From: Ginkgo biloba
Taxonomy: Eukaryota; Plantae; Ginkgophyta
Reading direction: 5' to 3'
Assembly (NCBI GenBank): GCA_024626585.2
Contig: JANKJI020000004.1
Span: 143,978,614-143,995,906 of the forward strand
Length of the DNA: 17,293 nt
The position numbers and the translations under genes were made by a program. The notes under the pieces are model-generated. The model searched no databases. It saw only the letters and a list, made by a program, of their open reading frames with translations, and was not told the DNA's origin. Positions within the stretch are counted from its first letter, which is position 1; every line of letters starts with the position of its first letter. Shown piece after piece: positions 1-17,293 of this stretch.

Positions 1-60
1 AACGCCTAGCTTTAGTCTCACAAGTTTTTCTTCACTTCAGTCTAAAGTGGACTTGAAACT

Positions 61-325
61 CATGCAACTCTGACTTGCATGCCGCATGTTTCTCCTCAAA
101 ATTAGCACCTAGTTTTGCATGTGCACATCATCGGTTGTCCTTGACTGCATGCATGTGCCCTCTCTCTCTTTTCTTTCACTAAATTGGCTTGCATGTACAT
201 GCATGTCCTTGCATGCAACCACAAAAGCATCCATACACGTACCCGCTTCATGCATGTTACTCCAATCACTTATGCATGCTCCGAAATTCGCATGCAACCA
301 TCAAAATCCTCATGCATGCATGCAA
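61..325. repeat. CATG/TGCA-dense low-complexity tract
   Basis: About 17 CATG tetramers in ~265 bp by manual count, including CATGCATGCATGCA at 311-324. Confidence 0.85.
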
Positions 326-340
326 ACCCTAACCTACAAG

Positions 341-443
341 AAAAAACAACTTTTTCGAATAGAAACTTTCTCAAAATAACAAATTTTTCCAAAAATAAAT
401 TTTTTCCCAAAATAGAAAATTTTCTCCAAACATAAAAATTTGC
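341..443. repeat. Degenerate tandem repeat, ~6 units of ~15-19 bp (AAAATAGAAAATTTTCTCC-like)
   Basis: aaaaaacaactttttcg / aatagaaactttctc / aaaataacaaatttttcc / aaaaataaattttttccc / aaaatagaaaattttctcc / aaacataaaaatttgc. Confidence 0.7.
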
Positions 444-522
444 TAGTANNNNNNNNNNNNNNNNNNNNNNNNNNNNNNNNNNNNNNNNNNNNNNNNNNNN
501 NNNNNNNNNNNNNNNNNNNNNN

Positions 523-1060
523 CTAACACAAACGATTGCTATCCTTTCCACCAAAAGCATAATGGGGTCAAGGCAATATCAATGGCCAATGATATGTCAA
601 GGATTCGAGCCCAAGATGACATATAAAGCAAGAAAGGAGAATATAATGGCAGATGCCCTTTCAAGGATGCCACAAGAAAATAATGTCACAAGGTGCAAGG
701 AACATTGAGGAGCGCAAAGGCATGATAAATGGTTTCATCAAGTAAGAAAAGCATTGGGAGATGGAGAACATCTCCAACNNNNNNNNNNNNNNNNNNNNNN
801 NNNNNNNNNNNNNNNNNNNNNNNNNNNNNNNNNNNNNNNNNNNAGATTCTCTGTGAGCTTCACAACAATCCTTTTGTGAGCCACGTGGGCTCCATCATAG
901 TCCTTTTGTAAGCACGTGGCAAGAGATAAGAAATATGAAACCACTAAGAAATGTGTATTGGAAGAAGGAGAAAGTAGATTATGTGAAGACATGTGAATAG
1001 TGTCAAGTTAATTAGGTGAAAAGGAAACAACCAACAGGATTGTTGATGTTGTTGCCACCT
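523..1060 (+). mobile_element. Ty3/gypsy pol remnant: RNase H C-terminus and integrase HHCC zinc finger
   Basis: 571-666 translates RQYQWPMICQGFEPKMTYKARKENIMADALSR (gypsy RNase H end, NxxADALSR). 846-890 gives ILCELHNNPFVSHVG and 956-1060 gives YWKKEKVDYVKTCE*CQVN*VKRKQPTGLLMLLPP (H-H-C-C followed by a GLLxPLP-like motif). The RH-then-INT order is gypsy. Confidence 0.92.
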
Positions 1061-1065
1061 CAAAC

Positions 1066-1718
1066 ATGATGGCCTTGGTCACTGATATGGTCAGATAGAC
1101 ACAGCAAGCCTTCCAGCAACAGCGAATGGACTTCTAGAAATAGTTGGCGCAAACATACTTGGACATGGCCAACTTCATCACTCAGCGCCAACAATATGGT
1201 ATTCAACGGGGTACTCCTCTAGGTGCTAACATTCCATAGGTTGTTCCTCTTCAGCCAACTTTAAAACTTGACACAAAGATTTCCATTCCTCAGTTTGAGG
1301 AGTCAATCAATCCTGAGGGCTTGGATAGCTAGATCAGGGCCATAGAGGCCTATTTCACTTGCCAACCGCAGCTCACAACACAATAGCATATCACTTTCAC
1401 AGTTGTACACATGTCCGAATAAGCACAGTTCTAGTGGCAGACTCATGTTCAAACACGAGCAGTTACTCAACAACCTGCCATCACCCAATTGGATGGCTTC
1501 AAGGCAATTGTCAAAGAACGACTCTATCTTTAGGGATACCTAGCCAACTTAAAAAATAAGTGGCTCCATTTAAGAAAGCAACTTGGATAGTTCGTGCAAC
1601 AGTACATAGATGCCTTCCATAAGATGTCCATCATGTTAGTTGTCACCAATGATGTTAAGAATCAACTGGTCAAGTTTGTCGATGGACTCTTTCTGTATCT
1701 ACAGTAAGAGTTTGAATT
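1066..1718 (+). mobile_element. Ty3/gypsy gag remnant (Retrotrans_gag capsid domain), pseudogenised
   Basis: A single unbroken frame from 1066 reads ...ISIPQFEESINPEGLDS*IRAIEAYF...AQF*WQTH...FKAIVKERLYL*GYLANLKNKWLHLRKQLG*FVQQYIDAFHKM...LVKFVDGL. This fits the gag pattern IPxF..W..YF..WW..F..LRQxxxxSVxxY..F..KFxxGL. It has 11 in-frame stops and no frameshift. Confidence 0.88.
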
Positions 1719-1818
1719 NNNNNNNNNNNNNNNNNNNNNNNNNNNNNNNNNNNNNNNNNNNNNNNNNNNNNNNNNNNNNNNNNNNNNNNNNNNNNNNNNN
1801 NNNNNNNNNNNNNNNNNN
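1719..1818. other. 100-N assembly gap (probably unsized join)
   Basis: Exactly 100 N. Confidence 0.9.
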
Positions 1819-2937
1819 AAAGGGTATATCCCACATTTGTAAAGGTGAGGGATCACTTTTGTTTTCTCACTTATAGTGAATTTTTTCTAATGAAAAGCAA
1901 TTGAGTTGGTTTTCAACACTTCAGGTTTCTTGCAAGTTTTAGTTGTGCACCAGTTTGCCTCTTGCGTTTGCAAGTTCTCTCACCCAACCGGTTCGATCCT
2001 AGTCAATCAAGTGTTTATTGATGTGATTCCACATCAAAATCAATAAACGAGAAAAGAAAAGTCCAATGTAAGGTGCCAATAGGAGAGTGACATGTGGCAA
2101 ACAACCTCATAGGATGGCAATTGGGATTAGGGCAATTCTAAAACAAAATCTATGGGGTTTATGACAACCGAACTTCATAATAAAATCAAAGTCATGTTTG
2201 GGCTTCACAACTTTGGACTCTTTGGCCTTATTTTTTGGCTTTCACTCCGTATATCTATTCTATGGATTCTCCTTATTCAATAGCTTGTTGGACATTCTAC
2301 ATAAGTCAAATTTTCAAATCGGAATATTCAGCATGTGGTTGAAATGGATGTGTCTCACCAGGGTTATTCCCCTTCCAAAGTTAGAGCATTGCTGTCCTAG
2401 GTGACATCATCATCATAAGGATATATTTTTTATGCAAACACCTCCTTTGCTAAGGAACCTCCAAAAAAATGATGCATGCCTCTCAACCCACCCCTCATCA
2501 AGGATCATTTTTGGCTTGGTTGCTATTTGTAAAGTAAAGCATTGCTCCTCCAAATTGTTGTTGGAGGTTTTCTAGCAAATAGTTACAGAAGTCTCCATTA
2601 AATTTAGGGTTTTGACTAGTTGAGTTCCATGGAACCATAGATACATAGAAACCATAACCTACAGAATGCATTATGATTAATATAAATAGACTATGGAAAA
2701 AATTAATCAATGAATGTTTTCTTAAGTCACATTCTCTATGGATTTTATGGATGATTTGATACATTTATGGTTGAAAATGATGCATGAGCATGCTAATTTA
2801 GTTAAGAAACCCTTCTTTTGCATGCTCACGAATACTTGTCATACTGATGTCCAAACCCTAGGTCTTGATCATAGGGTGGTATTTGTTTAACTAGCAGTGG
2901 GTTGAGATATATGTAGGATGGTGGTACAATTAGTGGA

Positions 2938-3074
2938 TTGAAAGAATACCCCTTAGTTCTATTAGTCATGCAAGTTGAAAGATACCCAGACTAACTATCA
3001 AGTTGAAAGGATACCCACTAGATTGTTAGTCACTCATACCATAACTTAACATAAATGGGTTAAAATGATACCCG
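2938..3074 (+). repeat. Short dispersed direct repeats (CAAGTTGAAAG(G)ATACCC), 3-4 copies, probably TE non-coding region
   Basis: ttgaaagaatacccc at 2938, caagttgaaagataccca at 2971, caagttgaaaggataccca at 2999 and a degenerate gttaaaatgatacccg at 3059. Confidence 0.6.
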
Positions 3075-4603
3075 AAGAGAGGTACCTTAACTAGATAAAC
3101 TTAAATACTACAAGTTAGGGGTGGATCCTACTTACACCTTGTGGTGCCAAAGAAGGGTTGAAATATTGATGTCAAATGAAGCGGTGGAGTCTACTAGAGC
3201 AATCATTGTTGCTAAGCAATGACAATGTGTGCAAGGATACTACCGAAGTTTGGCTATTGACACAAGAATCCTTTTAGGTCATAGGTGCCATTTTTTGATC
3301 CAAGTACAGGGTGAGGTTGCTACATTGTCCCACAACTAACCAATTTGTCTACTTACGAGAGACACTAGAGTGAATATACTTCCATCTATTGTGTGAAAAT
3401 AAATCAATTGGGGGCTAAGAAAACCAAACATTTGGTGTTGGTCCACCCCAATCTTCATCTTCATTCTCGAGTCACACGAGTCTCGATTGTCTATGATGTA
3501 GAATTATGATGCAAAGAGAGACGATCTCCACTTCGATATTGTGTAAGGGGGTGATGACCTTGATGCCTTTAAGAGTAGTTGTGGTAGTGGTATTAGGCCA
3601 TCCTTTGTGGGATACTCAAAGCATAAAGTCTTTCAACAAATTATTACAATGGGCTTGCATATGATCACTATGATAAGAATTCTAAAAATCCTTTCAAATG
3701 ATGAGTACTAGCATTTAGGCTTTAGCATGTTTTACTTTTAAATGTAAACTATATGAATCGTGATATTGATTAGCATGTTTTACTAATCAATGCTTAATTT
3801 CATGTTTGTGACTTCTAAAGCATTGTATGTTCTATCATCTACCTTATAGATGAAATCTGAAGATTTATTGATGGATTGTGACGCTATGGATAGAATCGAG
3901 TATAATTGAGATTTGCTCATCATAATGAATGTCTCAATATCTTTTATTAAAAAAATAAAAAGTGTTTCTTATTATGAAACTTTCAAAATCTCATGTTTTT
4001 CATTCCATAAATGATTCCTGTTTCTGGTAACTAGGCATTGCACTATCTTTTGCTTTTGGGTGGAAACCTACATTTCTAAGCATTACACTTTGGGATTTTT
4101 CCAAGTAAAGGCAAATTTATGATTTGCACATAACTTGTTGAAAGCTCAACATTGTTGAAAATTATATTGAGGAACACCATTTAACTAATAACCGATGTTC
4201 TATAAATTGATGCTTACCATCAAAAAACTAATCCAGTACCATTGTTGGCCATTATAGCAAACTCCAAGTCCAAGTGAAATACAAAAATCTTTATGCTCTT
4301 TGCATTGAACTAGGATCTAGCACCTTTTGCAACTCATAAACAACTATTGCCATTCCACCTCAAATATAATGCACTTCTCTTTTCAATTGAAAATGTGCTC
4401 TCAATACATTTAAATTTCTTTAAACATAGCTAGCAAGTCATAGAAAAGAACTTTCCTTTTGTTCATAAAAACCTTTTCATTAGCTATGAGACAGCACGAT
4501 GATCATATAAAACTGAAAATCACATCTGTGTAGGGACATTCACTAATCCAAATGACTATTGTCAACAACTTGGCACTGAATTGAATGGTGAAATATTATT
4601 TAC

Positions 4604-4783
4604 CCTTGTTTCTAAATAGTGAATCTTCTCCATTGCCCTATCTTGCTCCTCTTCTGCCTCAATAAGAAGATTTTCAATGTGCCTATGCTCTTTGATAACG
4701 ATCACTAGCCTCTTATCCATGTCCCTATTTAACCGAACGATTTCCTCAAGTTGGGTTTGCAGCTCATATAGTTGTGTCTCAAG
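4604..4783 (-). CDS. Internal coding exon (180 nt, phase 0/0), coiled-coil segment; the expected second coding exon of the same family as 16322-16567
   Basis: On the minus strand the acceptor is ttttcttggtatgtttaacctcAG|CTT and the donor is AGG|GTAAAT. It translates without stops as LETQLYELQTQLEEIVRLNRDMDKRLVIVIKEHRHIENLLIEAEEEQDRAMEKIHYLETR, with heptad periodicity and AT-rich intronic flanks. It is absent from the supplied ORF track. Confidence 0.85.
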
Positions 4784-6089
4784 CTGAGGTTAAACATACC
4801 AAGAAAAGAAAATGACAAAGTAAGCTTCAAAAAGAGGTACAATAATGAAAACAAACAACAAAATTATTTTTCATGATGTAAGAAGCACAAAATGATACGA
4901 GAGAAAGATTAAATGCCAAAAACATCTTTAGAAAAATTTGTAGTCTTGGTTAAAGATAAAAGATTCAATAAAAAGTAATGTTTTATGTGAAAAACATTAT
5001 TTGCACATTACATTTAGCATTTTAGTTAACATGAGTTACCAAACAATAGAGATACTCTACAATGATCTTTGAAATATGCATGGCTCTTTTAATGAATAAC
5101 CCAAAGAAGCATACATTATGGTACAACTAGATCATTTGAGTTATTTCTAATACTTAGCAACATCAAAAGTGCTAGTGGAGGGAACAAAAGTGGCATTAGA
5201 TTGAAGAAGTGCACAAATAATGCCAACACACTTAAATACATTTACTCGAAAAAAATGTAAAAATATGCTCAAAAAGTAGCTCGAGAAGGAACACAATTAA
5301 ATACATTTTCCCCAATCTATCTAGCATACTAGCAATGACTATTCCCTCAATCCTACCTATCAAGAAAAGCCGCACCCATTTTGCAAAAGTTATAGGTGCA
5401 CAAATCACAATACCCATCAAAATTGATAATCAACCTAGATTATGAACCAAAATGTAGCCTCCTTAGACCATGCCAACCATCTGAATGCCTTCACTACAAT
5501 CAATTCAACCATCCCAATAGAGAATGTCCACATCAACAATCTGATCCAAACACTTGAAAAGTTTGCTTGCAGAGCAGCAACTCCATCGTAGATTGCCCCA
5601 GACTTTCAAAGTATCACAAAAACAAAAAAAGTAAACTTGATGTCCTAACAACCGAAGGTGAACAAAATGCACATCAGATCACAAGAGCCAATTCCACTTG
5701 AACCACACCCCTCTCAAATCAAGTCAAGGGTGCATGACAAGGTGCATCCATCTAACACTCCAATTCAATCAATCCCATAATATAAAACCCTACACAATCA
5801 CAAGCCTAAATACCCAAACCATTGACAAGAAAAACAATAATTTCAAGCAACCATGCAGGATATCCAAGACTTACAAGAAGCAATAGATCCTTTCTCAACT
5901 AGATAAATAGAAAAACACTTTGGTTTAACTTCACAATAAAAGGATGTTGACGCCATGGCAACACACAACCAATGCCTATTTCAAAAACTAATGTAAATGC
6001 TTGATGAAGATGATATGATAGAATGCGTGATGGAGATCTTCACAAGCTTCGCCAACTTGAGCATTTAAAACAAATAAAATGCAAAAAAA

Positions 6090-6720
6090 ACCATGAAAAA
6101 GCATAAAGAGTTACAATTTAACCTTGACCACCCTCCATTCAAAGAACACTTCCGATTTGGAAATCAAATTTTATGGGAGATCCAGGTTATTAGATGCCAA
6201 GCCCCAAACTCTTATATATACCTGTCTTGCAAAATTATCAAAACCATGCACAATATAAAGGCAATTAAGACATCTTTGCAAAGAAGTTGATTCCAAACCT
6301 CAAAGAAAATTGCAAATCATGGGACATCCAAGATCCCTACCATAGTAGACTTTAGCCCCAGAGTAAATCTCTTACTTGTGCAAACCTAGCACGACATGGA
6401 TAAACCAACCTTTCAACACTCACACTGCAACACAACAGTTGCAAATGCACAAAGCATCATGCCATTAATGAGATTGATTGATGTGTCAATATCATTCCAC
6501 AAATTCACTATCATGGCCGACTTTAATTTGGCCCCTATCCAGATCATCCTAATATCTATAAGGCACTCATTGATACACCATAGATCTCAAAAATACACAG
6601 AGGTATGTGCATGGACAAAGGGAAGCTATGATTCAAGCAAGGGAAATGAAAGCTCATAGTCCCCTTGAATCCAAAGTGTGAACCCTCTATCATAGAAAAT
6701 GAGGAAGTTGAATATGATAA
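6090..6720 (+). mobile_element. Gypsy (non-chromovirus, Athila/Tat-like) aspartic protease remnant with probable gag C-terminal flank
   Basis: From 6333 it reads IPTIVDFSPRVNLLLVQT*HDMDKPTFQHSHCNTTVANAQSIMPLMRLIDVSISFHKFTIMADF, then after a frameshift YKALIDTP*ISK...KL*FKQGK*KLIVPLNP. This matches the retropepsin pattern LDxGSxVNxxPxxTWxxMGKPxL..ANxxxIxPLGxL..DF..YxALLGxxW. The catalytic Asp codon is at 6348-6350. Element boundaries are uncertain and may extend ~5440-7543. Confidence 0.75.
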
Positions 6721-9006
6721 GGAAATTATGGATATTCCTAAACCTAAGGATCTATAGCATTGCTATGCTACACATGACAACACCCAAGAACTAACAAAAG
6801 AAGCCAATTTACCCCACAAGCCTTCTAAATTCAGTAGTGCTAACTCTAATGCATGCCTAGTGGACTGAAAAACTTTCGATCACGACACCTACTCAATTTG
6901 TTGCTTCTTCAAGCCTGCCAAAGCAACATCCAATGCAATAGTAACTCATATATCATCTAAAGAAGGTGTTACAACATGAACTTATTCAGATATCTCTAAT
7001 ATTCCAATCTTCCATGATCTAAATATTGTAGACCATGTTGTGCATTTGTCTTCAGTGATCTCCTTTATCCACCACCATTCTCTGCTCACAATCATATTAT
7101 AATTCCCCAAAAAAATCTACAAACAAGCCATTTAGTGCTTTTTTGCAATCAACGCCACATTTTGGCATTGTTTTGAATATTTAAAAGATCTAGATCTACC
7201 TTTGTTCGATAGGTTAATTCCTCCATAAGACCATATCCATGCTTGCATCAAGCACTAGAAATACAAAGAAGAATTCAATGAGGCTTACTAGTTGCTTTTG
7301 TCTGCAGCTACACTAGCACCAATCCCTTACAACTAGCGCAAAGAGCAAGAAACCAAATATTAGACACGATATTGGATAGAACTCATAGAACTTAAAAAAA
7401 AAAGAGAAATGAAAAAATCATGGTCTTCGAAAACGAGAGAAATGATAAAAATCAAACACATCCTCCACCCTATCAAAGAGTCTGTGTTTAATGAATCCTT
7501 TGAAATGAATCTAGATGAATATTTGAGACATCATATTTTTTAATTATCTTCCAGAATTTTTCTTCTACGTGTATCATTCTCCCTATCTTCTTCAAACAAT
7601 GTGACTTGGAGGACAGAAACCTTTAGTAAATTACCTATGAAGTTGCTTTTGAATTTGCCATAGTACGAAGGGTTCCAAAGGAGAAGCGACTTGACAAAGC
7701 AACCTGCAGGCAAATTGGCATAGTAAACTTGGAAATCATACTGCAAGAAAAACCAATTTTCCGCATTTGAGGAAGCCTAGAGGTCATTTATTAGCCATCT
7801 TCTAGGAACAAAAGCATTATTTCAAAGTCAACTTAGCCCATTGAGATGCATCTTGTCAAGTTGACTCGAGAAAGGTATCGTACTTGGTACACTAGACACC
7901 AGATAGATGTTGGATGTCAAACTTAGTATATCACTTTTTTAGTTGGCAGCAGATTTTCTCAGTTTGACCCACAAGTTCAAACAAGAAAAGAGCAGGAAAC
8001 AATTCAGCTTGCTCGTAGGAGCAAGCAACAATTCCACACTGTTGGAGAAGCCTTGAAAGTGCTTAATTGCTGAAGAAAATTGAAGTGGATTGACAGTGAC
8101 TTAATCAGATACACAGAACTGCTAGTTAAAGCAGAATAAGGATTGGAAACCCAGTTGGTAAGCATTATACTGCTTTATGTTGGATGTCATGGTGTTAGTC
8201 TGACAGTCTTATGATGTAAGTAACGAATTGTAGTAGATTGGATAACTAAGCCTTGTGTCTTATAGTGATATTTAGCCATAGATTAACAATTTAACATAAA
8301 CAAAAGTCCACACCATAGAGTGTTGGTTGTTGATGGTTGTTGCATAAATTGCATAAGGGTTGGATGCTCAAGGTTGGATCCTGTAGATTGAAAAGATCAA
8401 CTTGACCTTTGAGTATCACGAGATAAAGGGGTGGAAATGAAGTCATGAGCCACATGATTGTGTTGCTAGATCAGAGAATGGGCACTGTTTGCACCATGAC
8501 CTATGGTTCAGTAGCGAGGATGGATTTTGTGGAACCATTGGTGGGAAGGATTGATTCCTTAGATCCACATAGGCAAGAAGGACAGATTGTGAGGATTTGC
8601 CAAGGGATAATACTTGTATATCGTGTGGAATCCCTAATAGATGATATGATGGAGGCATCATTGCATAATGATGTTCTTAATTGGATGTTGGGGGATCATC
8701 TAGCATACAAGTTCCTTCGAGTCTTGCATGATATGGCAATGCTTTATAAGCCCAATATTTTGAAGACACGCTCAGTGTTCATCTCCTTGTTGCAATAATA
8801 TTGGTTGGTTGAGTATTAACATAGGTACCAGGTTTTGGAGGAACCAAGGATGGCGCATGTAACAACATCCTTTGCCATAGACACTCAACTGCTTCAACAA
8901 AAATGCAGAGTTAGGCATTATAAAGCAATGTAATTTGAGGTTTGCAATTACATCTGCTTTTATAGATGAAATGGAATGTGATGAAACACACATGGATTCA
9001 ATTAGT

Positions 9007-10330
9007 GTATTAGTAGGAAACCCCTACCAATATTATATCAAATAAGTTTATTATTCTATTGAAAATAATTATATGCTCATAAAATATAAAGAGAATCTAA
9101 TTACTCCTTCTCTTAATACTCATTGAACTTATTTATAATCTACTAAGAAATCCACCATGATTGCAAATAATATAAAAAAATTAATTAATTAATTATGATT
9201 ATAATTATAGAGGAATCTTTAACTTGAGATGTATTGGTAGTTTAAGATTCTTACCGACAAGGTATATTTTCTCTTATGAAATATTATTATGATATATTAA
9301 GGATCCAAAAGGGATTCCTCCTTAAATATATATAGGATATTAAATAGATCTAGTTTTAGGTTTTATCCTTCTTAATTATCTATTATATAAATATTTAATA
9401 AGTGAAAATGATAAAGTAAAAATACAACTATAAGAACTCATTGATAATGGACATATCAAACTTATCACTTTTCCATATGGATCACCAATTCTCCTACTCT
9501 ATAAGAAATATGGAACATGGAGGCTATGTATTCATTAAATTATGATCCATCAATATAATTACAATTAAAAATTGATATACACTTCTTAGGATTAATGATA
9601 CCGTTAATTAACTTTATGATGCTAAGATATTTTTGAAGATTGATCTTAAAAATGGGTATTATCAAGTGTGAGTAAAATACAAAGAAATTGAGAATATAAC
9701 TTTTAATCATATATTTAGATTTTTTAAATGGGTTTTTATATCATTTTCAATTACTAATGCACCTAAAATATNNNNNNNNNNNNNNNNNNNNNTAATCTAG
9801 TCTATCATAGACAACTTCATATATACTATCTCTATGATGTTCTCACCTTTATTAAGATATATTTAGAGAATATAAAACATCTATAACATGTATTATAACT
9901 TATTAATCAACATCAACTTTAAGTACATTTGTTAAAATCCTCTTTTGATAAGTAAAGTGTCTCTTACCTTAGATTTGCCATTAATTATAAAGGTGTGAAT
10001 ATGGATCCTAATAATATTCAATCCTACAATATTAGCATATTCCTTCCATACTTTTTGGATTATGTATTTTATTAGGACTTGCTAATTTATTTCATAAATT
10101 TATTTTGAACTACTCAACTATTAATATTCCACTTCATCATCTCAATAAAGGAAAAATTCTATTTATTGGTCCCCTAAAAATAACGTGCATTCCAAGGACT
10201 TAAATATGCACTTTAAAAAAGACAAATTAGCTCTACCTCACCTTAAATAACCTTTTAAATTGAAATTAATTATTTAAATGATACCTTGGTTTTCATTCTT
10301 AAACAAAATGGTCATCTAGTTGAATGCCCT
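9007..10330 (+). mobile_element. Ty3/gypsy pol remnant: protease end, reverse transcriptase and RNase H start; extremely AT-eroded
   Basis: Recognisable decayed motifs occur in order: VLVGNPY (protease end), KDPKGIPP, L*ELIDNGHIKLITFPYGSPILLLYKKYGTWRLCI, ITIKN*YTLLRIND, AKIFLKIDLKNGYYQV, KWVFISFSITNAP, YLYDVLTF (from YLDDILIF), YLRFAINYKGVNMDP, LLGLANLFHKFI, LALPHLK*PF and ILKQNGHLV. Confidence 0.93.
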
Positions 10331-10430
10331 NNNNNNNNNNNNNNNNNNNNNNNNNNNNNNNNNNNNNNNNNNNNNNNNNNNNNNNNNNNNNNNNNNNNNN
10401 NNNNNNNNNNNNNNNNNNNNNNNNNNNNNN
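10331..10430. other. 100-N assembly gap (probably unsized join)
   Basis: Exactly 100 N; base composition and element type change across it. Confidence 0.9.
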
Positions 10431-10930
10431 TCATATTTTTTAATAAGCTTCAAGAAGCCAACACCTAAGAATCCAAATGAAATACGAAATGAAATCCCTA
10501 AAAAATACATACAAGTATATGAAGCCGAGCGCACAACCGATGACTAGGGAATTCTAACACTAGACCAAACATCAAGCAAGCCCTATCTTCATGAATGCAA
10601 GGCAAGCACTTTAAACATGGAAACAAAGGAAGAACCACAAAAAAAGTTCATGGAAGATTATTGAACTGAATTTGTTGGTCATGAAACTAAGTGTTACAAC
10701 TCAGACTTTGAAGAAAAAGGCAACTCAAGCTTTGACAAATTTAACCTTGAAAAGTGGAACCAATAATACCTTGAGAAGCGCCCTTAATTTAGCACGTAGA
10801 GACACCAAGAGAACAAAGCTAAATGGTGGGGCCCGATTATGTATTCTTCGAGTAATGACAAAACCCCAAGAAGAGGTCTTGAAGAGAGAGAAAATTGTGA
10901 AGGGTAAGACCAAAAGGGAATTCTAGCGTA
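10431..10930 (+). mobile_element. Probable internally deleted gypsy pol fragment (pre-RT linker and GPY/F-like integrase tail)
   Basis: The decayed frame contains TLNMETKEEPQKKFMEDY* (like the NIGTEExPKxxxIGDYW linker before RT in non-chromovirus gypsy) and later KAKWWGPIM (like KWxGPF). Similarity is weak and judged by eye. Confidence 0.4.
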
Positions 10931-13008
10931 GGGTACTATTGACTGGGTTTTGACCTAGTCAACTTGTCTAGTGTCTAAAAATCAGTTTCCTTTCTAGATA
11001 GAGGTAATTAGTTGATAACCAATTTGAAGANNNNNNNNNNNNNNNNNNNNNNNNNNNNNNNAAAGGAAAGTTAGAAAGGCGACACTAGGTAACAAGAAAG
11101 AGAAAACTCATAGAAAAGCACCAAAATCAAGTTTAATGACTAGACCTGAGACTAGGTGGCATTCGATGAGTTTGCAGTTGTCAATTTAGTTTTAAGAAGT
11201 GTTTTTAGTTAAAATACAAGCCTTAGTTTCAGGTGTCGTTTACACAATGCAGGAGCCAGGTGAGTTTTTTAATGATTGTAAGCGGTTACAAATTTAGTTN
11301 NNNNNNNNNNNNNNNNNNNNNNNNNATTTTAATTTTTTTTGCATTACATTGCCATGAATTTAATAGAGAAATATTTTACCGAATACCATCAATTAATTCC
11401 ATAGTTCCGCATGCTTTACAAAATATTAAATAAAATAAAATAAATAAATAAGTAAATAAATGCAAAAGAGTAAAGAGAAACGAACATGGATTAATTAGAC
11501 AGAACCTGTAGACAAGTTTTATAGTTGGCATACTCGCCTCCGCCTCAGCTTGGCCCCAACTCGCTCCATTGACCTCCGAACAAAAGGTAACTTCAGGTTC
11601 CTTTGGCCGATGGACGGTTTTAAAGGAGTTAAAACGAGTAACGATATGTAGACGAGGACTAAAGAGGTGAGTACCAGTAACAATAACGCTGCACAATATA
11701 GTTATTTAAATTGGCTAAAGCAAATGGGAGATAAAGAACACAAACTGGTGAATTAAAAGGTTAAAGCCTTTTTCTGCGAAAGCTCGAGGTCGCGTGAGGA
11801 CTACATGTGACCGAGCACCATAAGTGAAACATAACACCTTTTAATAAATCAAATATTAGACATTAGTCGGTGAACTTAGGAAATCGATATACGGGAGGTA
11901 TGTATGTTCTCTACGGCTCCGAATGCGCTCTCATCGCTGGGCGGCTACTCCCAAATGATTAACCATTCCCGCAAGGCCATAGGTTGATAGTATCTGCTAC
12001 ATTTCTGCTGGGTTACGTGGTGTCAAAAGGAGGCGGCACAGACTAAAGGTTTAATACCAGACGGCATACACTAAACAACGGTTGTGGCGGAAAGAAGCGA
12101 TTCATTTTATTGACATATACCACAATAAGGTTCAGAGAGAAGGTCGCCTAAGGAGTATGCACAACCCACCGCTGATAGAATTGAAACAGAACCCCTTGCA
12201 TGAGTAACAGAACCACTGTGTGATCTATGTCTTCAAAGAGAAATTAGCAATGACCATTGAGACCGATTGGGATGATTAGTAGTCATCTCTAACATCAATT
12301 GGGTAGGTGTTTTATAGATAATGAAACAAGGTATAAGCAAGAATGAATGACCATTCATTACCAATATAACCACCCCAAGATGGGCCACATGGGAACGGTA
12401 AGACGCAGAGAATAGTTTGGGGTTAGCATAACAACCCTGGATTAGCTAGTATAGAGAGTAGTCACTGTAGAAATGCAATGATAGACAGGTATGGAGTTAT
12501 AGCCATAGAATTTGCTTCCGAAAAATAGAACGGAGGTAGAATGAAATAGAAATACCTCAAAGATGGAAGAAGTTCAAATATAAGAGGACCATAACAATTG
12601 TTGCCTACACGTTTCTATGTATTCCTTCCTCTTGCTATGCCCTTCGATCAATTGCCTTTTCTCAATTTTTCCCCAATGATTTTCTCCAACAATTTCTCCC
12701 TTCATAAATTTCCTCCAACCTCTTCTCCAACCATTGGACAAATGAAAATGGCTCCTTTTATGTTTTTTGAAACTCCGCCTGATGCCAACAGAAAAATCGT
12801 TGGGCATGCCAAGAAAGGTGGAGAGAGAATACCCCCCTTGGACCCATGCACCATCCAATGTGACCTTGAGCCTCTAGGAAAAAGGGCTATAGTGGTCAAA
12901 AAGGGGTTTTGCATGATTTTTTANNNNNNNNNNNNNNNNNNNNNNNNNNNNNNNNNNNNNNNNNNNNNNNNNNNNNNNNNNNNNNNNNNNNNNNNNNNNN
13001 NNNNNNNN

Positions 13009-13222
13009 AGAATAACCAATAGTGAGAACGGGTGGGACAAGCCCCCCAACCTTGGGCATATACAAAAAAAAGATGTATATATACATTAAATACAACACCT
13101 CTGCAAATCTCAGTCAACATCAGCTCCATGGGGAGAGATTGACTATGGTCAATCAAAGATCCCAGAACAAATGTAGACATGTGCCTGATCCATTGGGCCA
13201 TGGAGTCAAAAACCCAAATAGT
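13009..13222 (-). mobile_element. Possible 3' end of an L1-type LINE (RNase H-like tail plus 3'UTR)
   Basis: The minus frame WVFDSMAQWIR...SLPMELML resembles the 'VADxLAxW...LP' end of plant L1 ORF2. It is followed by T-rich sequence and a GGGGGGCTTGTCCCACC hairpin. The piece is short and gap-bounded. Confidence 0.3.
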
Positions 13223-13804
13223 NNNNNNNNNNNNNNNNNNNNATGATCAGTGACCTCCGTACTCAACTGAAACAGTGACCTCTAGTGCTATATATCTCAA
13301 GAGCATTCAATCACGGGCAACCTCATAAGACCAGGAGTTCTCTCAATCAAGAGCTAATTCGCTTTGGCAAGACCTGCGCAATGACAAGGCAAGATTTCTA
13401 GCTGCAAACAGGATTGGAAACTGAATATGGAATGCAAGTGATCAACAAAGAGGAATAAAGAGCGATACCATCTGATAAGTCAACCTTTGTCAAAGGTCGA
13501 TAGTCGCGAAGTCAAGACGAGCGAGTTGGAGAAGGTCATATCAACCATAGTAGTGTACCAGATCCTTTCAACACATGATTCAAAAACAACGAGAAAACAA
13601 CCAAAACGACTAAAAAGTAAGCAATAATGAAGAAAAAACATAAAACACGAAAATGGATTAAAACCCTGACAGAAATAAAATGAGCATGTAGCAAACCAAA
13701 AGCGAAAATAACAAGCCAAAAGAGGTGCCACAACAAGCTAGAAAGCAACAGCAAAAAAAAAGATAAATAATGGCAAAGAGAATGGGAACCCTAGCAACAT
13801 GGGA

Positions 13805-13904
13805 NNNNNNNNNNNNNNNNNNNNNNNNNNNNNNNNNNNNNNNNNNNNNNNNNNNNNNNNNNNNNNNNNNNNNNNNNNNNNNNNNNNNNNNNNNNNNNNN
13901 NNNN
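13805..13904. other. 100-N assembly gap (probably unsized join)
   Basis: Exactly 100 N. Confidence 0.9.
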
Positions 13905-15281
13905 ACCAAACACTTATTGATGAAGAAGCATGCCTCTTACTTATTCACTCCTCACTTCATATTTAAGGCTACATGGAAGAAGGGGGAGAAGGTGGATATA
14001 GCACTATTCTTATATGATTTGATGGATTCCAACCTAACTAGGTGGAAACAGGGAAAGGATAAGGAGATAAAGCATCCAGGTGTGATCCAATTGATTATTA
14101 ATTCTTGTTTAAAAGTTCTTACATTTGTTGAACAACGAAAATTTTCACTTGCATCTCAAGAGAAAATGTATTTTCTTGCATCCCAAGTACAGGGAAGTCC
14201 TGAAGGTGAAAGCCATGAGAGAAAAGTAGGTTGTTCTAGAGAAGGAAAGGAAAGTCATAGAGGAATTGGAGGAGTGAAAGTCTTCACTTGTACTTGGTAT
14301 ACAGGTGAGTTTAGAAGCCATCCATGAGAAGAGGAGTCGGTTCCCCATAGATAAAGAAATGGTTGAAGTGCCATCAAGAGAGGAGGAAGGGCATAAAACT
14401 CTATTTGTATCTGAGTCACTAGTAAGGAGGTCAAAGAGGCCGAGGAAGGTTGTCCAGACAACTAAGAAGGGGAAGAAGGAAAATAAGTAAGATTCATGGC
14501 CACCTACACTTGCTATACAGGTAGAAGACATAAGGAACAAGAGGGTATAGTTTATGAAAAAATGCATTCACCTATACCGCCTATGCAAGTGGAAGAGAAT
14601 AAAGAAGTGGAGGGCACGACCCACGAATAAGGTTGTTCACTTGCACCTTCAATACAAGTGAAAAAAGATTAAAAATTAAAGGTTGTGGGCCCTAAACCCT
14701 TGCTTGTGAGTGATGATATAGTCGCTCAATTGTTGATGGAAACGAGAGTACACATGCATTAGTCTATTAATCACCTTTGGTTTAAATAAAATGAGAGGTT
14801 GCAAGTAGAAGTTGACAAATGGAAGCAATAGGTAATATATCTAGAAGAACAAATTGAGGAGCAAGATGCTAGTCTTAGGGATGCAACAAATCAGATTGCA
14901 GACATGTAGATAGAATTGCAGGTGATGAAGGATGTTGAAAAGGATTTGAAAGATAAGTTGACAGATTCTAATTTGCTTAGGAATATAACCCTTATAGAAA
15001 ATAAAAAATTAAAAAGGGTGAATGAAGAATTAAAGTAGCAATTCTAGGAATTAACTAAGGATCCTTTAGGAAATTTTCTTATTAATTAGGAATATCAACA
15101 CTTTCAGGTGAATAAGGATCAATTTATATAGCTGATAAAATCATTAGAAGAATAATATTTGAGGATAAGAAGGCTAATCACTTAGTGGAATGAAATTAAA
15201 AACTCTATGAGTAATTATGAGCATATGGTACAATTAGCCTAGGAGATTCATAGTTAAGAGGAAATGTATGCAGAGTGTTAG
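13905..15281 (+). mobile_element. Decayed accessory (extra) ORF of a probable LTR retrotransposon: conserved N-domain, charged linker and long coiled coil
   Basis: 13905-14110 reads KHLLMKKHASYLFTPHFIFKATWKKGEKVDIALFLYDLMD...IKHPGVIQLIINSCL, like plant transposon-associated extra ORFs. 14799-15281 is one frame, LQVEVDKWKQ*VIYLEEQIEEQDASLRDATNQIADM*IELQVMKDVEKDLKDKL..., with mostly TAG stops at likely Gln positions and no introns. Confidence 0.6.
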
Positions 15282-15419
15282 AATTATAATGAAACTTCTA
15301 GATTAGGGTAACCAAAGTATGTTGATTATTTTGTCATGTCATGTTTTGCGTCTTGAGAGTTGTATCGACTATATAACCATAATTGTAAAATAACTCTATA
15401 TGTACATTTTGTATTAATG

Positions 15420-16321
15420 CAATTCAATTCAAGTTTTTTGTGTTAATCTTCGTATCTATCTCTTACCTTTCAACAATTGGATTTCTGTGCTTTGCAATTT
15501 TTGAACTAGAAAAATGGGATTTACTTATTACAGTAATTATCGGTTTTAAGATTTTTGGCAGGATAGAGACATGCATTTGTGGGGTCCAAATTTTTGGTTT
15601 GCAGCATGCTGCTTCTGCCTCTATTTTTGTTGTAGGCCTCGTCGCTCTAAAACACCATATACACTTTATTAGAATTGTGGTAATTTTTACTACATTTTTT
15701 CCTTGTGTCTGCACATACAGTAGAACATATGTGGTTATCTATACCTTTCTGCAGTAGTGTTATGTATGCCTGTTATAGTATTGATGTGCATCTTTGTCTG
15801 TTTGTGCCTGTATGCATTTGTGCGTTTGCACATCTGATTGTACGTTGATCATATGCACAAATGCATGAGTTTCATATTGAACATCTATTCCGTATTAGTA
15901 TCACATTCTCATGGTTCTGTGCTATGCAATCGTGCTTTATGAAATGTGTTTGTAATAGAGTCGTGGCTCATTGCATTGACCATCTTTTGTTGGATGTGCA
16001 GGCAATGGTTTTCTTTTTCACTTGAACCTGTTGGGAAGTGTGTTTTTCGTATGAAATGTTTTACAGGAGTAATAATATCTCATTGGTGAGGAGTTTCAAC
16101 TTCATTGGATTATGTCTTTAATACATGTTTCTTGGTTTTCTAAAAGTAGCCCAGATAGTGTTTTATTTCTTCCCTTAAAGTAGCTAATGTGTTGTGATGA
16201 TTTTACATGTCACAGTTACAGCGACGAAGGCGTCTTATTACTATTTCAAATGTGTCTCCTCCTAAAGTTGCCTTTGGATTATAAGAAGGGATAGTGCTAG
16301 CCGTAACAGTACGGGTAAAAC
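15420..16321 (+). other. Probable 5'UTR intron (T-rich) and 5'UTR part of the ATG exon; candidate acceptors CAG ending at 16215 or 16221
   Basis: Strong T/GT richness typical of plant introns ends in ...ttttacatgtcacAG ttacAG, about 100 nt before the ATG. No TE coding signal is seen. Confidence 0.5.
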
Positions 16322-16567
16322 ATGGTTGGGGTGCTGAAGACAATAATCACAGAAGTTTCTTTCTTGGCAACAGAGCTACTGTGCTTGATCAAGCTCTTAT
16401 GGCATGTTTGTGGGAGAACTGTCCATCTTATACTGTTGCCATGGTTAAAACTTTTCAAGTTCTTCTTTGGTTTATATCTGAGCAACGGCCGGAGGATGAT
16501 TACATGGGGCTTGACTGCCATTTCTGCCCCTCTGCGACTTCTTAGAGCCTCACGAAGGGAAAAATTT
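16322..16567 (+). CDS. First coding exon (82 codons) of a conserved uncharacterised plant protein with hydrophobic N-terminus followed by a coiled coil (At5g45310-like family, recalled from memory)
   Basis: ATG is in good context (aaaacATGG) with an in-frame TAA at 16316-16318. The frame MVGVLKTIITEVSF...ISAPLRLLRASRREKF ends at a canonical phase-0 donor TTT|GTGAGT (16568) followed by T-rich intron. The C-terminal end resembles the family motif 'LPxRxLxALxRExL' as I recall it; no search was run. Confidence 0.8.
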
Positions 16568-17293
16568 GTGAGTTCATCATTTTATGTTTATATCTTTCAT
16601 GTTGAATTCAGGTCTTCACTTCTGAGGAAAGATCATGTACACTGATTTTAATCAAGCGGTTGTTGACACTTGTATCGATTAATTTAAGATTTATTGGTGG
16701 TATTTTCTTTTTTTCTAGTGTCATTGAGTAGACTGGTATGCTGCAATATCAGTAGTAGATTTTGCTTTTTTTAAGCTACACAATTTCTTTAAAATTCTCT
16801 TGGTTGGTTCTCTAGAATCATATGAAGATATGTTAAACTGGTAGCTGTTGCAACCAAAAAATCAAGAAATGATGACAAAAACTATTTTCAGCTGCAAAGA
16901 TCATTACCCTGCAAAAATATATTTGAACATATAATAATTAATTCTAAGTAGATCCAAGCTTTTTGTATTGCACCTGTGAATTGAAAAATTCCACATCTCA
17001 AATGTATTTTATGGTTTGTGGACAAGATAGAACGATAAGCACTCTAGGGTTGAGCATGCTTGTGATGGGTTGGCACTAGAATTGTTACACGTATTTCTTA
17101 TTATTGACTTGCTGGTTAATGATGATACGGATAATTTTATACTATTCCTTGTTTCTCTAACAAACTAATACAAGCGTAGTAGGCTTACCATTCAAGCAGA
17201 TTAACATTGACTCCTAATTCAAGGGGCTTTATTATGTGGGGGCTATAACCTTATTTCCTTAAGTGTTATGATTGAAGGCTGGCATTTACCTTG
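16568..17293 (+). other. Intron following the ATG exon, running off the window end
   Basis: Starts with GTGAGT, is T-rich, and contains no further coding exon that I can see. Confidence 0.65.

What the first reader, a model, noticed from the sequence alone, without database searches (positions are those of the whole stretch)
4604..16567. Consecutive exons of one gene family on opposite strands and in reversed order
Seen: the + exon 16322-16567 ends in phase 0 (...LRASRREKF|GT) and the - exon 4783-4604 begins in phase 0 (AG|LETQLYELQTQLE...). Both are intact with canonical splice sites in a background where all recognisable TE coding sequence is decayed. Knowledge, from memory: the joined peptide mirrors the At5g45310-like family junction ('..RxLxALxRExL|LExxLxELQxELE..'). 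No cis partner for either exon is visible in the window. Inference: two 100-N joins separate them, so a mis-oriented or mis-ordered scaffold block is most likely, and it would hide the gene from annotation. Alternatives are a real intragenic inversion, an inverted paralog, or mod(mdg4)-style opposite-strand trans-splicing, which would be remarkable in a plant nuclear gene.
Basis: partly seen in the sequence, partly recalled or inferred. Interest (0 to 1): 0.8.

Follow-up and report, generated by a model that had tools for sequence, protein, structure and literature searches.

The report
Ginkgo gene exons split by scaffolding
Two real, neighbouring exons of a Ginkgo membrane coiled-coil gene point in opposite directions across assembly joins of unknown length; a normal same-strand version of the gene is already annotated in Ginkgo, so this is most likely an assembly or gene-copy matter, not exotic splicing.

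Summary
Window 16322-16567 (+) is an intact 82-codon first exon, and 4783-4604 (-) is an intact 60-codon phase-0 exon. Neither contains an N.

Both belong to the plant At5g45310/MGD1-like family (transmembrane plus coiled-coil). In the Ginkgo biloba model Gb_02168 they are residues 1-82 (79/82 identical) and 83-142 (60/60 identical), so they are exons 1 and 2. The same intron positions occur in Papaver and Cryptomeria.

The window holds no exon 3 onward and no same-strand partner for either exon. Two 100-N joins of unknown length lie between the exons. Flipping the single block that starts at 13905 would restore a normal minus-strand gene.

Ginkgo already has a same-strand model, so trans-splicing is not needed. 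Two further near-identical models, Gb_23259 and Gb_34007, cover exons 3 onward only. Exon 1 here differs from Gb_02168 at three clustered residues, which points to a second, fragmented copy or haplotype.

Estimated odds:
- Scaffolding artefact: about 0.6.
- Real inversion or inverted duplicate in a gene copy: about 0.37.
- Trans-splicing: at most 0.01.

Nothing available here (no reads, no other Ginkgo DNA) can settle orientation. The finding is ordinary and of low interest.

The parts
16322..16567 (+). Exon 1 (82 codons, ATG to phase-0 donor) of a Ginkgo At5g45310/MGD1-like gene; encodes the hydrophobic N-terminal segment
   Evidence: Open frame followed by GTGAGT donor. 79/82 identical to residues 1-82 of Gb_02168, E 3e-53. 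53% identical to P0002 residues 1-77. Differs from Gb_02168 at N55I, R58G and G63A.
4604..4783 (-). Exon 2 (60 codons, phase 0 at both ends) of the same family; start of the coiled coil
   Evidence: AG acceptor and GTAAAT donor. 60/60 identical to residues 83-142 of Gb_02168. 49% identical to P0002 residues 79-137. The same 180-nt exon occurs in Papaver and is skipped exactly in Cryptomeria isoform X2.
13805..13904 (.). 100-N join of unknown length; left edge of the block that carries exon 1
   Evidence: Flipping the block to its right would put exon 1 upstream of exon 2 on the minus strand.
10331..10430 (.). 100-N join of unknown length; right edge of the 8.5-kb block that carries exon 2
1719..1818 (.). 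100-N join of unknown length; left edge of the block that carries exon 2, in the direction where exon 3 would be expected
   Evidence: No exon 3 match in 1-4603 on the minus strand.
10431..13804 (.). 3.4-kb block between the two 100-N joins, itself broken by four short estimated gaps; no family exon

Best explanation
The two pieces are exons 1 and 2 of a Ginkgo biloba gene, or a second copy or haplotype of it, for an At5g45310/MGD1-like protein. That protein has a hydrophobic N-terminal helix, a coiled coil and a conserved hydrophobic C-terminal domain. The locus was assembled as several small blocks (8.5 kb, 3.4 kb and at least 3.4 kb) joined by 100-N spacers of unknown length. The block that starts at 13905 and carries exon 1 was most likely put in backwards, or a paralogous block was put in the wrong place. 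In the real chromosome, exon 1, an intron of roughly 10 kb or more, exon 2 and the later exons would then lie on one strand and be cis-spliced as usual.

Shown here: exon identity, family, adjacency in the protein, conserved intron positions, the position of the unknown-length joins, the existence of a cis model, and the existence of near-identical extra copies. Inferred: that the orientation itself is wrong.
For: - Gb_02168 (P0009) carries these exons contiguously as residues 1-82 and 83-142, followed by exons 3 onward. A gene model built on one strand of one scaffold therefore exists in Ginkgo.
- Two 100-N joins lie between the exons, and the intervening block is riddled with short gaps. No repeat or overlap spans any join that could vouch for orientation.
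- One flip, of the block from 13905 rightwards, restores the canonical order. The resulting intron 1 of about 10 kb or more is reasonable: the Cryptomeria orthologue spans 14.4 kb, and the Taxus model starts exactly at exon 2, as if exon 1 were out of the predictor's reach.
- Ginkgo has two more near-identical models of exons 3 onward (Gb_23259 and Gb_34007; 10/234 aa differ from Gb_02168). Both lack exons 1-2 and carry the same foreign first exon. Near-identical copies are the kind of sequence that short-read assemblers break into small scaffolds (established knowledge).
- The 3/82 differences in exon 1 match that copy-to-copy divergence (Fisher p = 0.39).
Against: - Orientation was not tested. 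No reads, optical map or second assembly were available.
- Exon 1 here is not identical to that of Gb_02168. The differences are three clustered substitutions, and each sequence carries its own derived states. The exon may therefore belong to a different copy from exon 2, which a simple flip would not explain.
- I do not know which assembly pipeline wrote the 100-N spacers, so the unreliability of these joins rests on general knowledge, not on evidence from this assembly.
Confidence: 0.6

Rival explanations
1. The arrangement is real. This locus is a rearranged or partial duplicate of the Gb_02168 gene. Either a small inversion has a breakpoint in intron 1, or a local inverted duplicate of exon 1 sits inside the long intron 1 of the minus-strand gene. 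The plus-strand exon 1 is then a stranded, probably non-functional fragment. It is still intact only because the duplication is recent.
For: - Exon 1 differs from Gb_02168 at 3 of 82 residues while exon 2 is identical. Three or more differences in 142 aa are unlikely for alleles at amino-acid rates of 0.2-0.5% (p = 0.003-0.035), but fit the 4.3% divergence between Ginkgo copies.
- The window's I55N change hits a position that is hydrophobic in all 11 relatives aligned.
- Ginkgo has at least three copies of the 3' part of the gene, and two lack exons 1-2.
- No other annotated model contains an exon 1 or 2.
Against: - Small inversions that separate exon 1 from exon 2 are rarer than orientation errors of kilobase-sized blocks at unknown-length joins (general knowledge).
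- No inverted repeat or duplicated flank marks a breakpoint in the window.
- Every possible breakpoint interval contains an unresolved gap.
Confidence: 0.37
2. The arrangement is real and functional. Two transcripts from opposite strands are joined by mod(mdg4)-style trans-splicing to make the mRNA.
For: Only the geometry in this assembly: intact splice donor and acceptor, matching phase 0, opposite strands, and no cis partner within the window.
Against: - A cis gene model with these very exons exists in Ginkgo (Gb_02168).
- The orthologous genes in Cryptomeria and Papaver are ordinary cis genes with the same intron positions.
- The exons are separated by joins of unknown length and orientation.
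- Exon 1 is not the variant found in the annotated protein.
- No transcript evidence is available.
Confidence: 0.01

Closest known systems
Ginkgo biloba gene model Gb_02168 (EukProt EP01018_P024340; P0009, 376 aa)
   Same: Exon 2 is 60/60 identical and exon 1 is 79/82 identical. The exon boundaries fall at residues 82|83 and 142|143, exactly as in the window.
   Different: The model has both exons and exons 3 onward on one strand. Exon 1 has I55, G58 and A63 where the window has N, R and G. The window holds no exon 3 onward.
At5g45310 / Chloris virgata MGD1 family of plant coiled-coil membrane proteins (PMC11724609)
   Same: Same architecture as the paper describes: a possible N-terminal transmembrane helix followed by a conserved coiled coil. 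The tobacco homologue named in the paper (XP_016510532.1) is P0072, a member of the hit family. Intron positions are conserved in Papaver.
   Different: Only the first 142 residues are encoded here. Function is known only from over-expression (drought resistance) and a Golgi-like localisation reported in that paper. Nothing about function was tested here.
Ginkgo models Gb_23259 and Gb_34007 (P0017, P0124)
   Same: Near-identical copies of the same gene. They show that the gene was recently duplicated in Ginkgo, or that the assembly is redundant here. Their divergence from Gb_02168 (10/234 aa) matches that of the window's exon 1 (3/82).
   Different: They contain exons 3 onward only, preceded by a shared foreign 42-aa first exon. 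That first exon is not in the window.
mod(mdg4) / lola-type trans-splicing of Drosophila
   Same: Exons that would need joining lie on opposite strands in the assembly.
   Different: There, no cis alternative exists and junction transcripts are documented. Here a cis gene model exists, orientation is unverified and no transcripts were examined.

Membership tests
At5g45310 / MGD1-like coiled-coil membrane protein family | Significant sequence homology of the N-terminal hydrophobic segment | tested here: met
   Exon 1 against 1.84 billion representatives: P0002 E 1.1e-16, P0003 E 3.5e-10. BLASTP against P0002 gives E 4e-27. 96% identical to Gb_02168.
At5g45310 / MGD1-like coiled-coil membrane protein family | Conserved coiled-coil segment directly after the N-terminal segment | tested here: met
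   Exon 2 aligns to P0002 residues 79-137 (E 1e-10), to residues 83-142 of five gymnosperm proteins, and to 114 family members at E < 1e-3. Pfam gives only sub-threshold coiled-coil matches.
At5g45310 / MGD1-like coiled-coil membrane protein family | Conserved hydrophobic C-terminal domain (the ...FSACLSLLVGMI...ALLSFNWFILG... region) | tested here: not met
   This domain is absent from the window on both strands. It is present in Gb_02168. The window therefore holds only the 5' part of a gene.
At5g45310 / MGD1-like coiled-coil membrane protein family | Family-typical intron positions (phase 0 after the N-terminal segment; 180-nt second exon) | tested here: met
   The Papaver nudicaule locus L001 was solved exactly: exon 1 is 285 nt, exon 2 is 180 nt, and the junctions read ...RERL|LESRL... 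and ...LVNE|LQDL.... Cryptomeria isoform X2 lacks exactly residues 83-142.
At5g45310 / MGD1-like coiled-coil membrane protein family | Documented link of the hit family to AT5G45310 itself | tested here: met
   P0072 carries accession XP_016510532.1. PMC11724609 lists that protein with NP_001330291.1 (AT5G45310) as a homologue of MGD1. The Arabidopsis protein itself was not retrieved.
Opposite-strand trans-spliced gene (mod(mdg4) type) | No cis copy of the partner exon anywhere in the genome | tested here: not met
   Gb_02168 joins exon 1 (96% identical) and exon 2 (100% identical) in one model. A genome-wide DNA copy count could not be done.
Opposite-strand trans-spliced gene (mod(mdg4) type) | Verified opposite orientation in the chromosome | not testable with these tools
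   Two 100-N joins lie between the exons. No reads were available.
Opposite-strand trans-spliced gene (mod(mdg4) type) | Transcripts spanning the exon 1-exon 2 junction with this locus's variants | not testable with these tools
   No Ginkgo transcript data were reachable. The Gb_02168 cluster has a single member, from EukProt.

The most novel reading that the evidence does not exclude
The head-to-head arrangement is real in the Ginkgo chromosome, and this copy is still expressed by joining transcripts from opposite strands (antiparallel trans-splicing). That would be the first such case in a plant nuclear gene.
Probability: 0.007. Interest if true: 0.85.

Novelty: already known. Interest (0 to 1): 0.12.

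Why it matters
The scientific weight is small. The gene family is known and the Ginkgo gene is already modelled in cis.

The practical value is for curation:
- This stretch of the Ginkgo assembly probably carries a mis-oriented or misplaced small block.
- The family is represented by one complete model and two truncated models. Those truncated models may reflect the kind of break seen here.

Anyone studying the MGD1/At5g45310 family in gymnosperms, or counting its copies, should not trust the current models without long-read support.

If the orientation proved real, the locus would be a dated example of a small inversion or inverted exon duplication that disables a young gene copy in a giga-genome. 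That would be of modest interest.

Tried and rejected
- **Pfam on both exons.** No family for exon 1. Only sub-threshold coiled-coil noise for exon 2.
- **Word-index search with exon 1 alone.** Nothing in the 45-143 aa length range.
- **Search for a cis partner or further exons in the window.** tblastn was run with the exons themselves and with P0002, P0003, P0009, P0017 and P0022. Only the two known exons appear.
- **Internal test of orientation.** I looked for repeats, LTR pairs or overlapping block ends across the joins. Only two chance-level 30-33-nt matches turned up.
- **Pfam on ten other open frames**, to find a transposon that spans a join. No hits.
- **Cryptomeria locus DNA.** Not delivered because the file is too large; only the 14.4-kb gene span is known.
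- **Search for a second Ginkgo model with exons 1-2**, using residues 1-142 of P0009. Only Gb_02168 was found.
- **Exact-sequence look-up of window ORFs.** Not in the collection.
- **Earlier scan notes by sequence.** Blank.
- **Rfam.** Nothing.
- **Two long repetitive proteins in the big search (P0001, P0004).** They are low-complexity repeat products unrelated to the family, so I rejected them.
- **Joined 142-aa peptide.**
- **Processed pseudogene.** Rejected. Both exons end exactly at conserved intron positions with AG/GT signals, and homology stops there.

Full report
**What is in the sequence**

Window 16322-16567 on the plus strand is an open 82-codon frame. It starts at ATG and is followed by a GTGAGT donor. 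Window 4783-4604 on the minus strand is an open 60-codon frame. It is preceded by a pyrimidine-rich tract ending in AG and followed by GTAAAT. Both lengths are multiples of three, so the donor of the first and the acceptor of the second are in phase 0.

I tested the gaps first, as the scan's program asked. Neither exon contains or touches an N. Exon 2 lies in gap-free sequence 1819-9771, and exon 1 in gap-free sequence 13905-17293. Between the exons lie two 100-N spacers (10331-10430, 13805-13904) and five short gaps of 20-85 N. A third 100-N spacer lies at 1719-1818. The window is therefore made of blocks of at least 1.7, 8.5, 3.4 and at least 3.4 kb, joined at points of unknown length.

**What the exons are**

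Pfam recognises neither exon. A word-index search with exon 1 alone found nothing in its narrow length range. I then ran the exhaustive representative search with exon 1.

- That search found two full-length proteins whose N-termini match: P0002 (360 aa, E 1.1e-16) and P0003 (E 3.5e-10).
- Against P0002, exon 1 aligns to residues 1-77 (E 4e-27) and exon 2 to residues 79-137 (E 1e-10). The two peptides therefore abut in a real protein.
- A search from P0002 returned 333 plant proteins.
- When the listed proteins were compared with the two exons, one stood out: Ginkgo biloba Gb_02168 (P0009, 376 aa). Exon 1 is 79/82 identical to its residues 1-82, and exon 2 is 60/60 identical to its residues 83-142.

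The window is therefore Ginkgo DNA, as other notes of this scan also concluded. The two pieces are exons 1 and 2 of this gene family.

Hit P0072 carries accession XP_016510532.1. The MGD1 paper (PMC11724609) lists that tobacco protein with AT5G45310 as a homologue of MGD1. The paper describes MGD1 as an uncharacterised protein with a possible N-terminal transmembrane helix and a conserved coiled coil. It reports a Golgi-like localisation, and drought resistance on over-expression.

Each exon was searched by reference.

**Exon boundaries are conserved**

- In Papaver nudicaule (locus L001) the gene structure can be solved exactly. Exon 1 is 285 nt, exon 2 is exactly 180 nt, and the junctions ...RERL|LESRL... 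and ...LVNE|LQDL... align to the Ginkgo junctions. The introns are 200 and 130 nt.
- Cryptomeria isoform X2 (P0003) lacks exactly residues 83-142.
- The truncated Ginkgo models join their foreign first exon exactly at residue 143.
- The partial Taxus model starts exactly at exon 2.

These are genuine genomic exons with intron flanks, not pieces of a processed pseudogene.

**What is missing**

tblastn with three Ginkgo proteins and two other gymnosperm homologues finds nothing else of the family in the window. This holds on either strand and includes the highly conserved C-terminal domain.

- On the minus strand there are 5.5 kb upstream of exon 2 without an exon 1.
- On the minus strand there are 2.8 kb, and 4.6 kb counting across the join, downstream of exon 2 without an exon 3.
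- On the plus strand only 726 nt follow exon 1 before the window ends.

Long introns are normal here. The Cryptomeria orthologue spans 14.4 kb.

**Geometry**

Flipping block 1819-10330 in place would put exon 2 on the plus strand, but still upstream of exon 1. That flip does not repair the gene. Flipping the block that begins at 13905 puts exon 1 on the minus strand upstream of exon 2. This gives a normal minus-strand gene with an intron 1 of about 10 kb or more. One orientation error at one 100-N join is therefore enough.

**A complication: more than one copy**

Exon 1 differs from Gb_02168 at three residues within nine codons: N55I, R58G and G63A. An alignment with 11 relatives shows derived states on both sides.

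| Position | Window | Gb_02168 | State in relatives | Derived in |
|---|---|---|---|---|
| 55 | N | I | always hydrophobic | window |
| 58 | R | G | mostly R (H in three, K and G in one each) | Gb_02168 |
| 63 | G | A | mostly G | Gb_02168 |

These are two diverged sequences, not one sequence plus errors.

Ginkgo also has two further models, Gb_23259 and Gb_34007. Both are near-identical copies of exons 3 onward, with 10/234 aa differing from Gb_02168. Both begin with the same foreign 42-residue exon and lack exons 1-2.

- The 3/82 divergence of the window's exon 1 fits this copy-to-copy divergence (Fisher p = 0.39).
- Zero differences in the 60 residues of exon 2 is not unusual at that rate (p = 0.07).
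- Three or more differences in 142 residues would be unlikely for alleles at amino-acid rates of 0.2-0.5% (p = 0.003-0.035).
- No other annotated Ginkgo model in the collection contains exons 1-2.

The most coherent reading is that the window is a second, unannotated 5' part of the gene. It could be a paralogue, an uncollapsed haplotype, or the missing front of one of the truncated models. Near-identical copies of this kind break short-read assemblies into small scaffolds. Those scaffolds are later strung together with arbitrary orientation. That last step rests on general knowledge, not on a test here.

**Verdict on mechanism**

- **Artefact, about 0.6.** A mis-oriented or misplaced block at an unknown-length join.
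- **Real rearrangement, about 0.37.** An inversion, or a local inverted duplicate of exon 1, in a young and probably redundant copy. Its intactness would say nothing about function, given only about 2-4% amino-acid divergence.
- **Opposite-strand trans-splicing, at most 0.01.** It has no support beyond the geometry. It is made unnecessary by the cis model Gb_02168 and by ordinary cis genes with the same structure in Cryptomeria and Papaver.

Nothing inside the window vouches for any join. There are no repeats or overlaps across the gaps, no recognisable transposon domain in ten other open frames, and no Rfam family.

**What could not be done**

No Ginkgo reads, transcripts or other Ginkgo DNA were reachable. 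Orientation, genome-wide copy number and the junction transcript therefore remain untested. The decisive steps are listed separately.

**Novelty and interest**

The gene family is known, the Ginkgo gene is already modelled, and the odd arrangement is most likely an assembly matter. Interest is low. The useful outcome is a curation flag for this locus and for the truncated models Gb_23259 and Gb_34007.

Noticed in passing
Proteins P0017 (Gb_23259) and P0124 (Gb_34007); not in the window: Two Ginkgo gene models are near-identical copies of exons 3 onward of Gb_02168 (10/234 aa differ, including P296Q and L302F in the conserved C-terminal domain). They share an identical foreign 42-aa first exon joined exactly at the exon-3 boundary. 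They look like truncated or mis-modelled duplicates whose true exons 1-2 are missing or unreachable.
   Followed up: partly
Protein P0003 versus P0012 (Cryptomeria japonica LOC131052175): The annotated isoform X2 skips exactly the 60-residue exon 2. The first third of the coiled coil may therefore be a cassette exon in conifers.
   Followed up: no
Protein P0015 (Taxus chinensis, partial): The Taxus model begins exactly at exon 2. This suggests that exon 1 is separated by a very long intron or an assembly break there too.
   Followed up: no
window 13905-14324 (+): A 140-codon open frame starts right after the 100-N join, and the mechanical ORF call runs through the gap from 13770. It has no Pfam match at E <= 0.1. 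It may be a decayed transposon remnant.
   Followed up: partly
window 5001-7000 and 15001-17000: AT skew is positive (+0.19 to +0.25) upstream of the minus-strand exon 2 and negative (-0.12 to -0.15) around the plus-strand exon 1. In both places the presumed sense strand is T-rich, as plant introns usually are. This is suggestive only and is confounded by repeats.
   Followed up: no
Proteins P0001 and P0004 (hits of the big search): Two proteins of about 2,000 aa match short parts of exon 1 in 14-17 stretches each. They are translated tandem repeats or low-complexity sequence, not relatives.
   Followed up: yes
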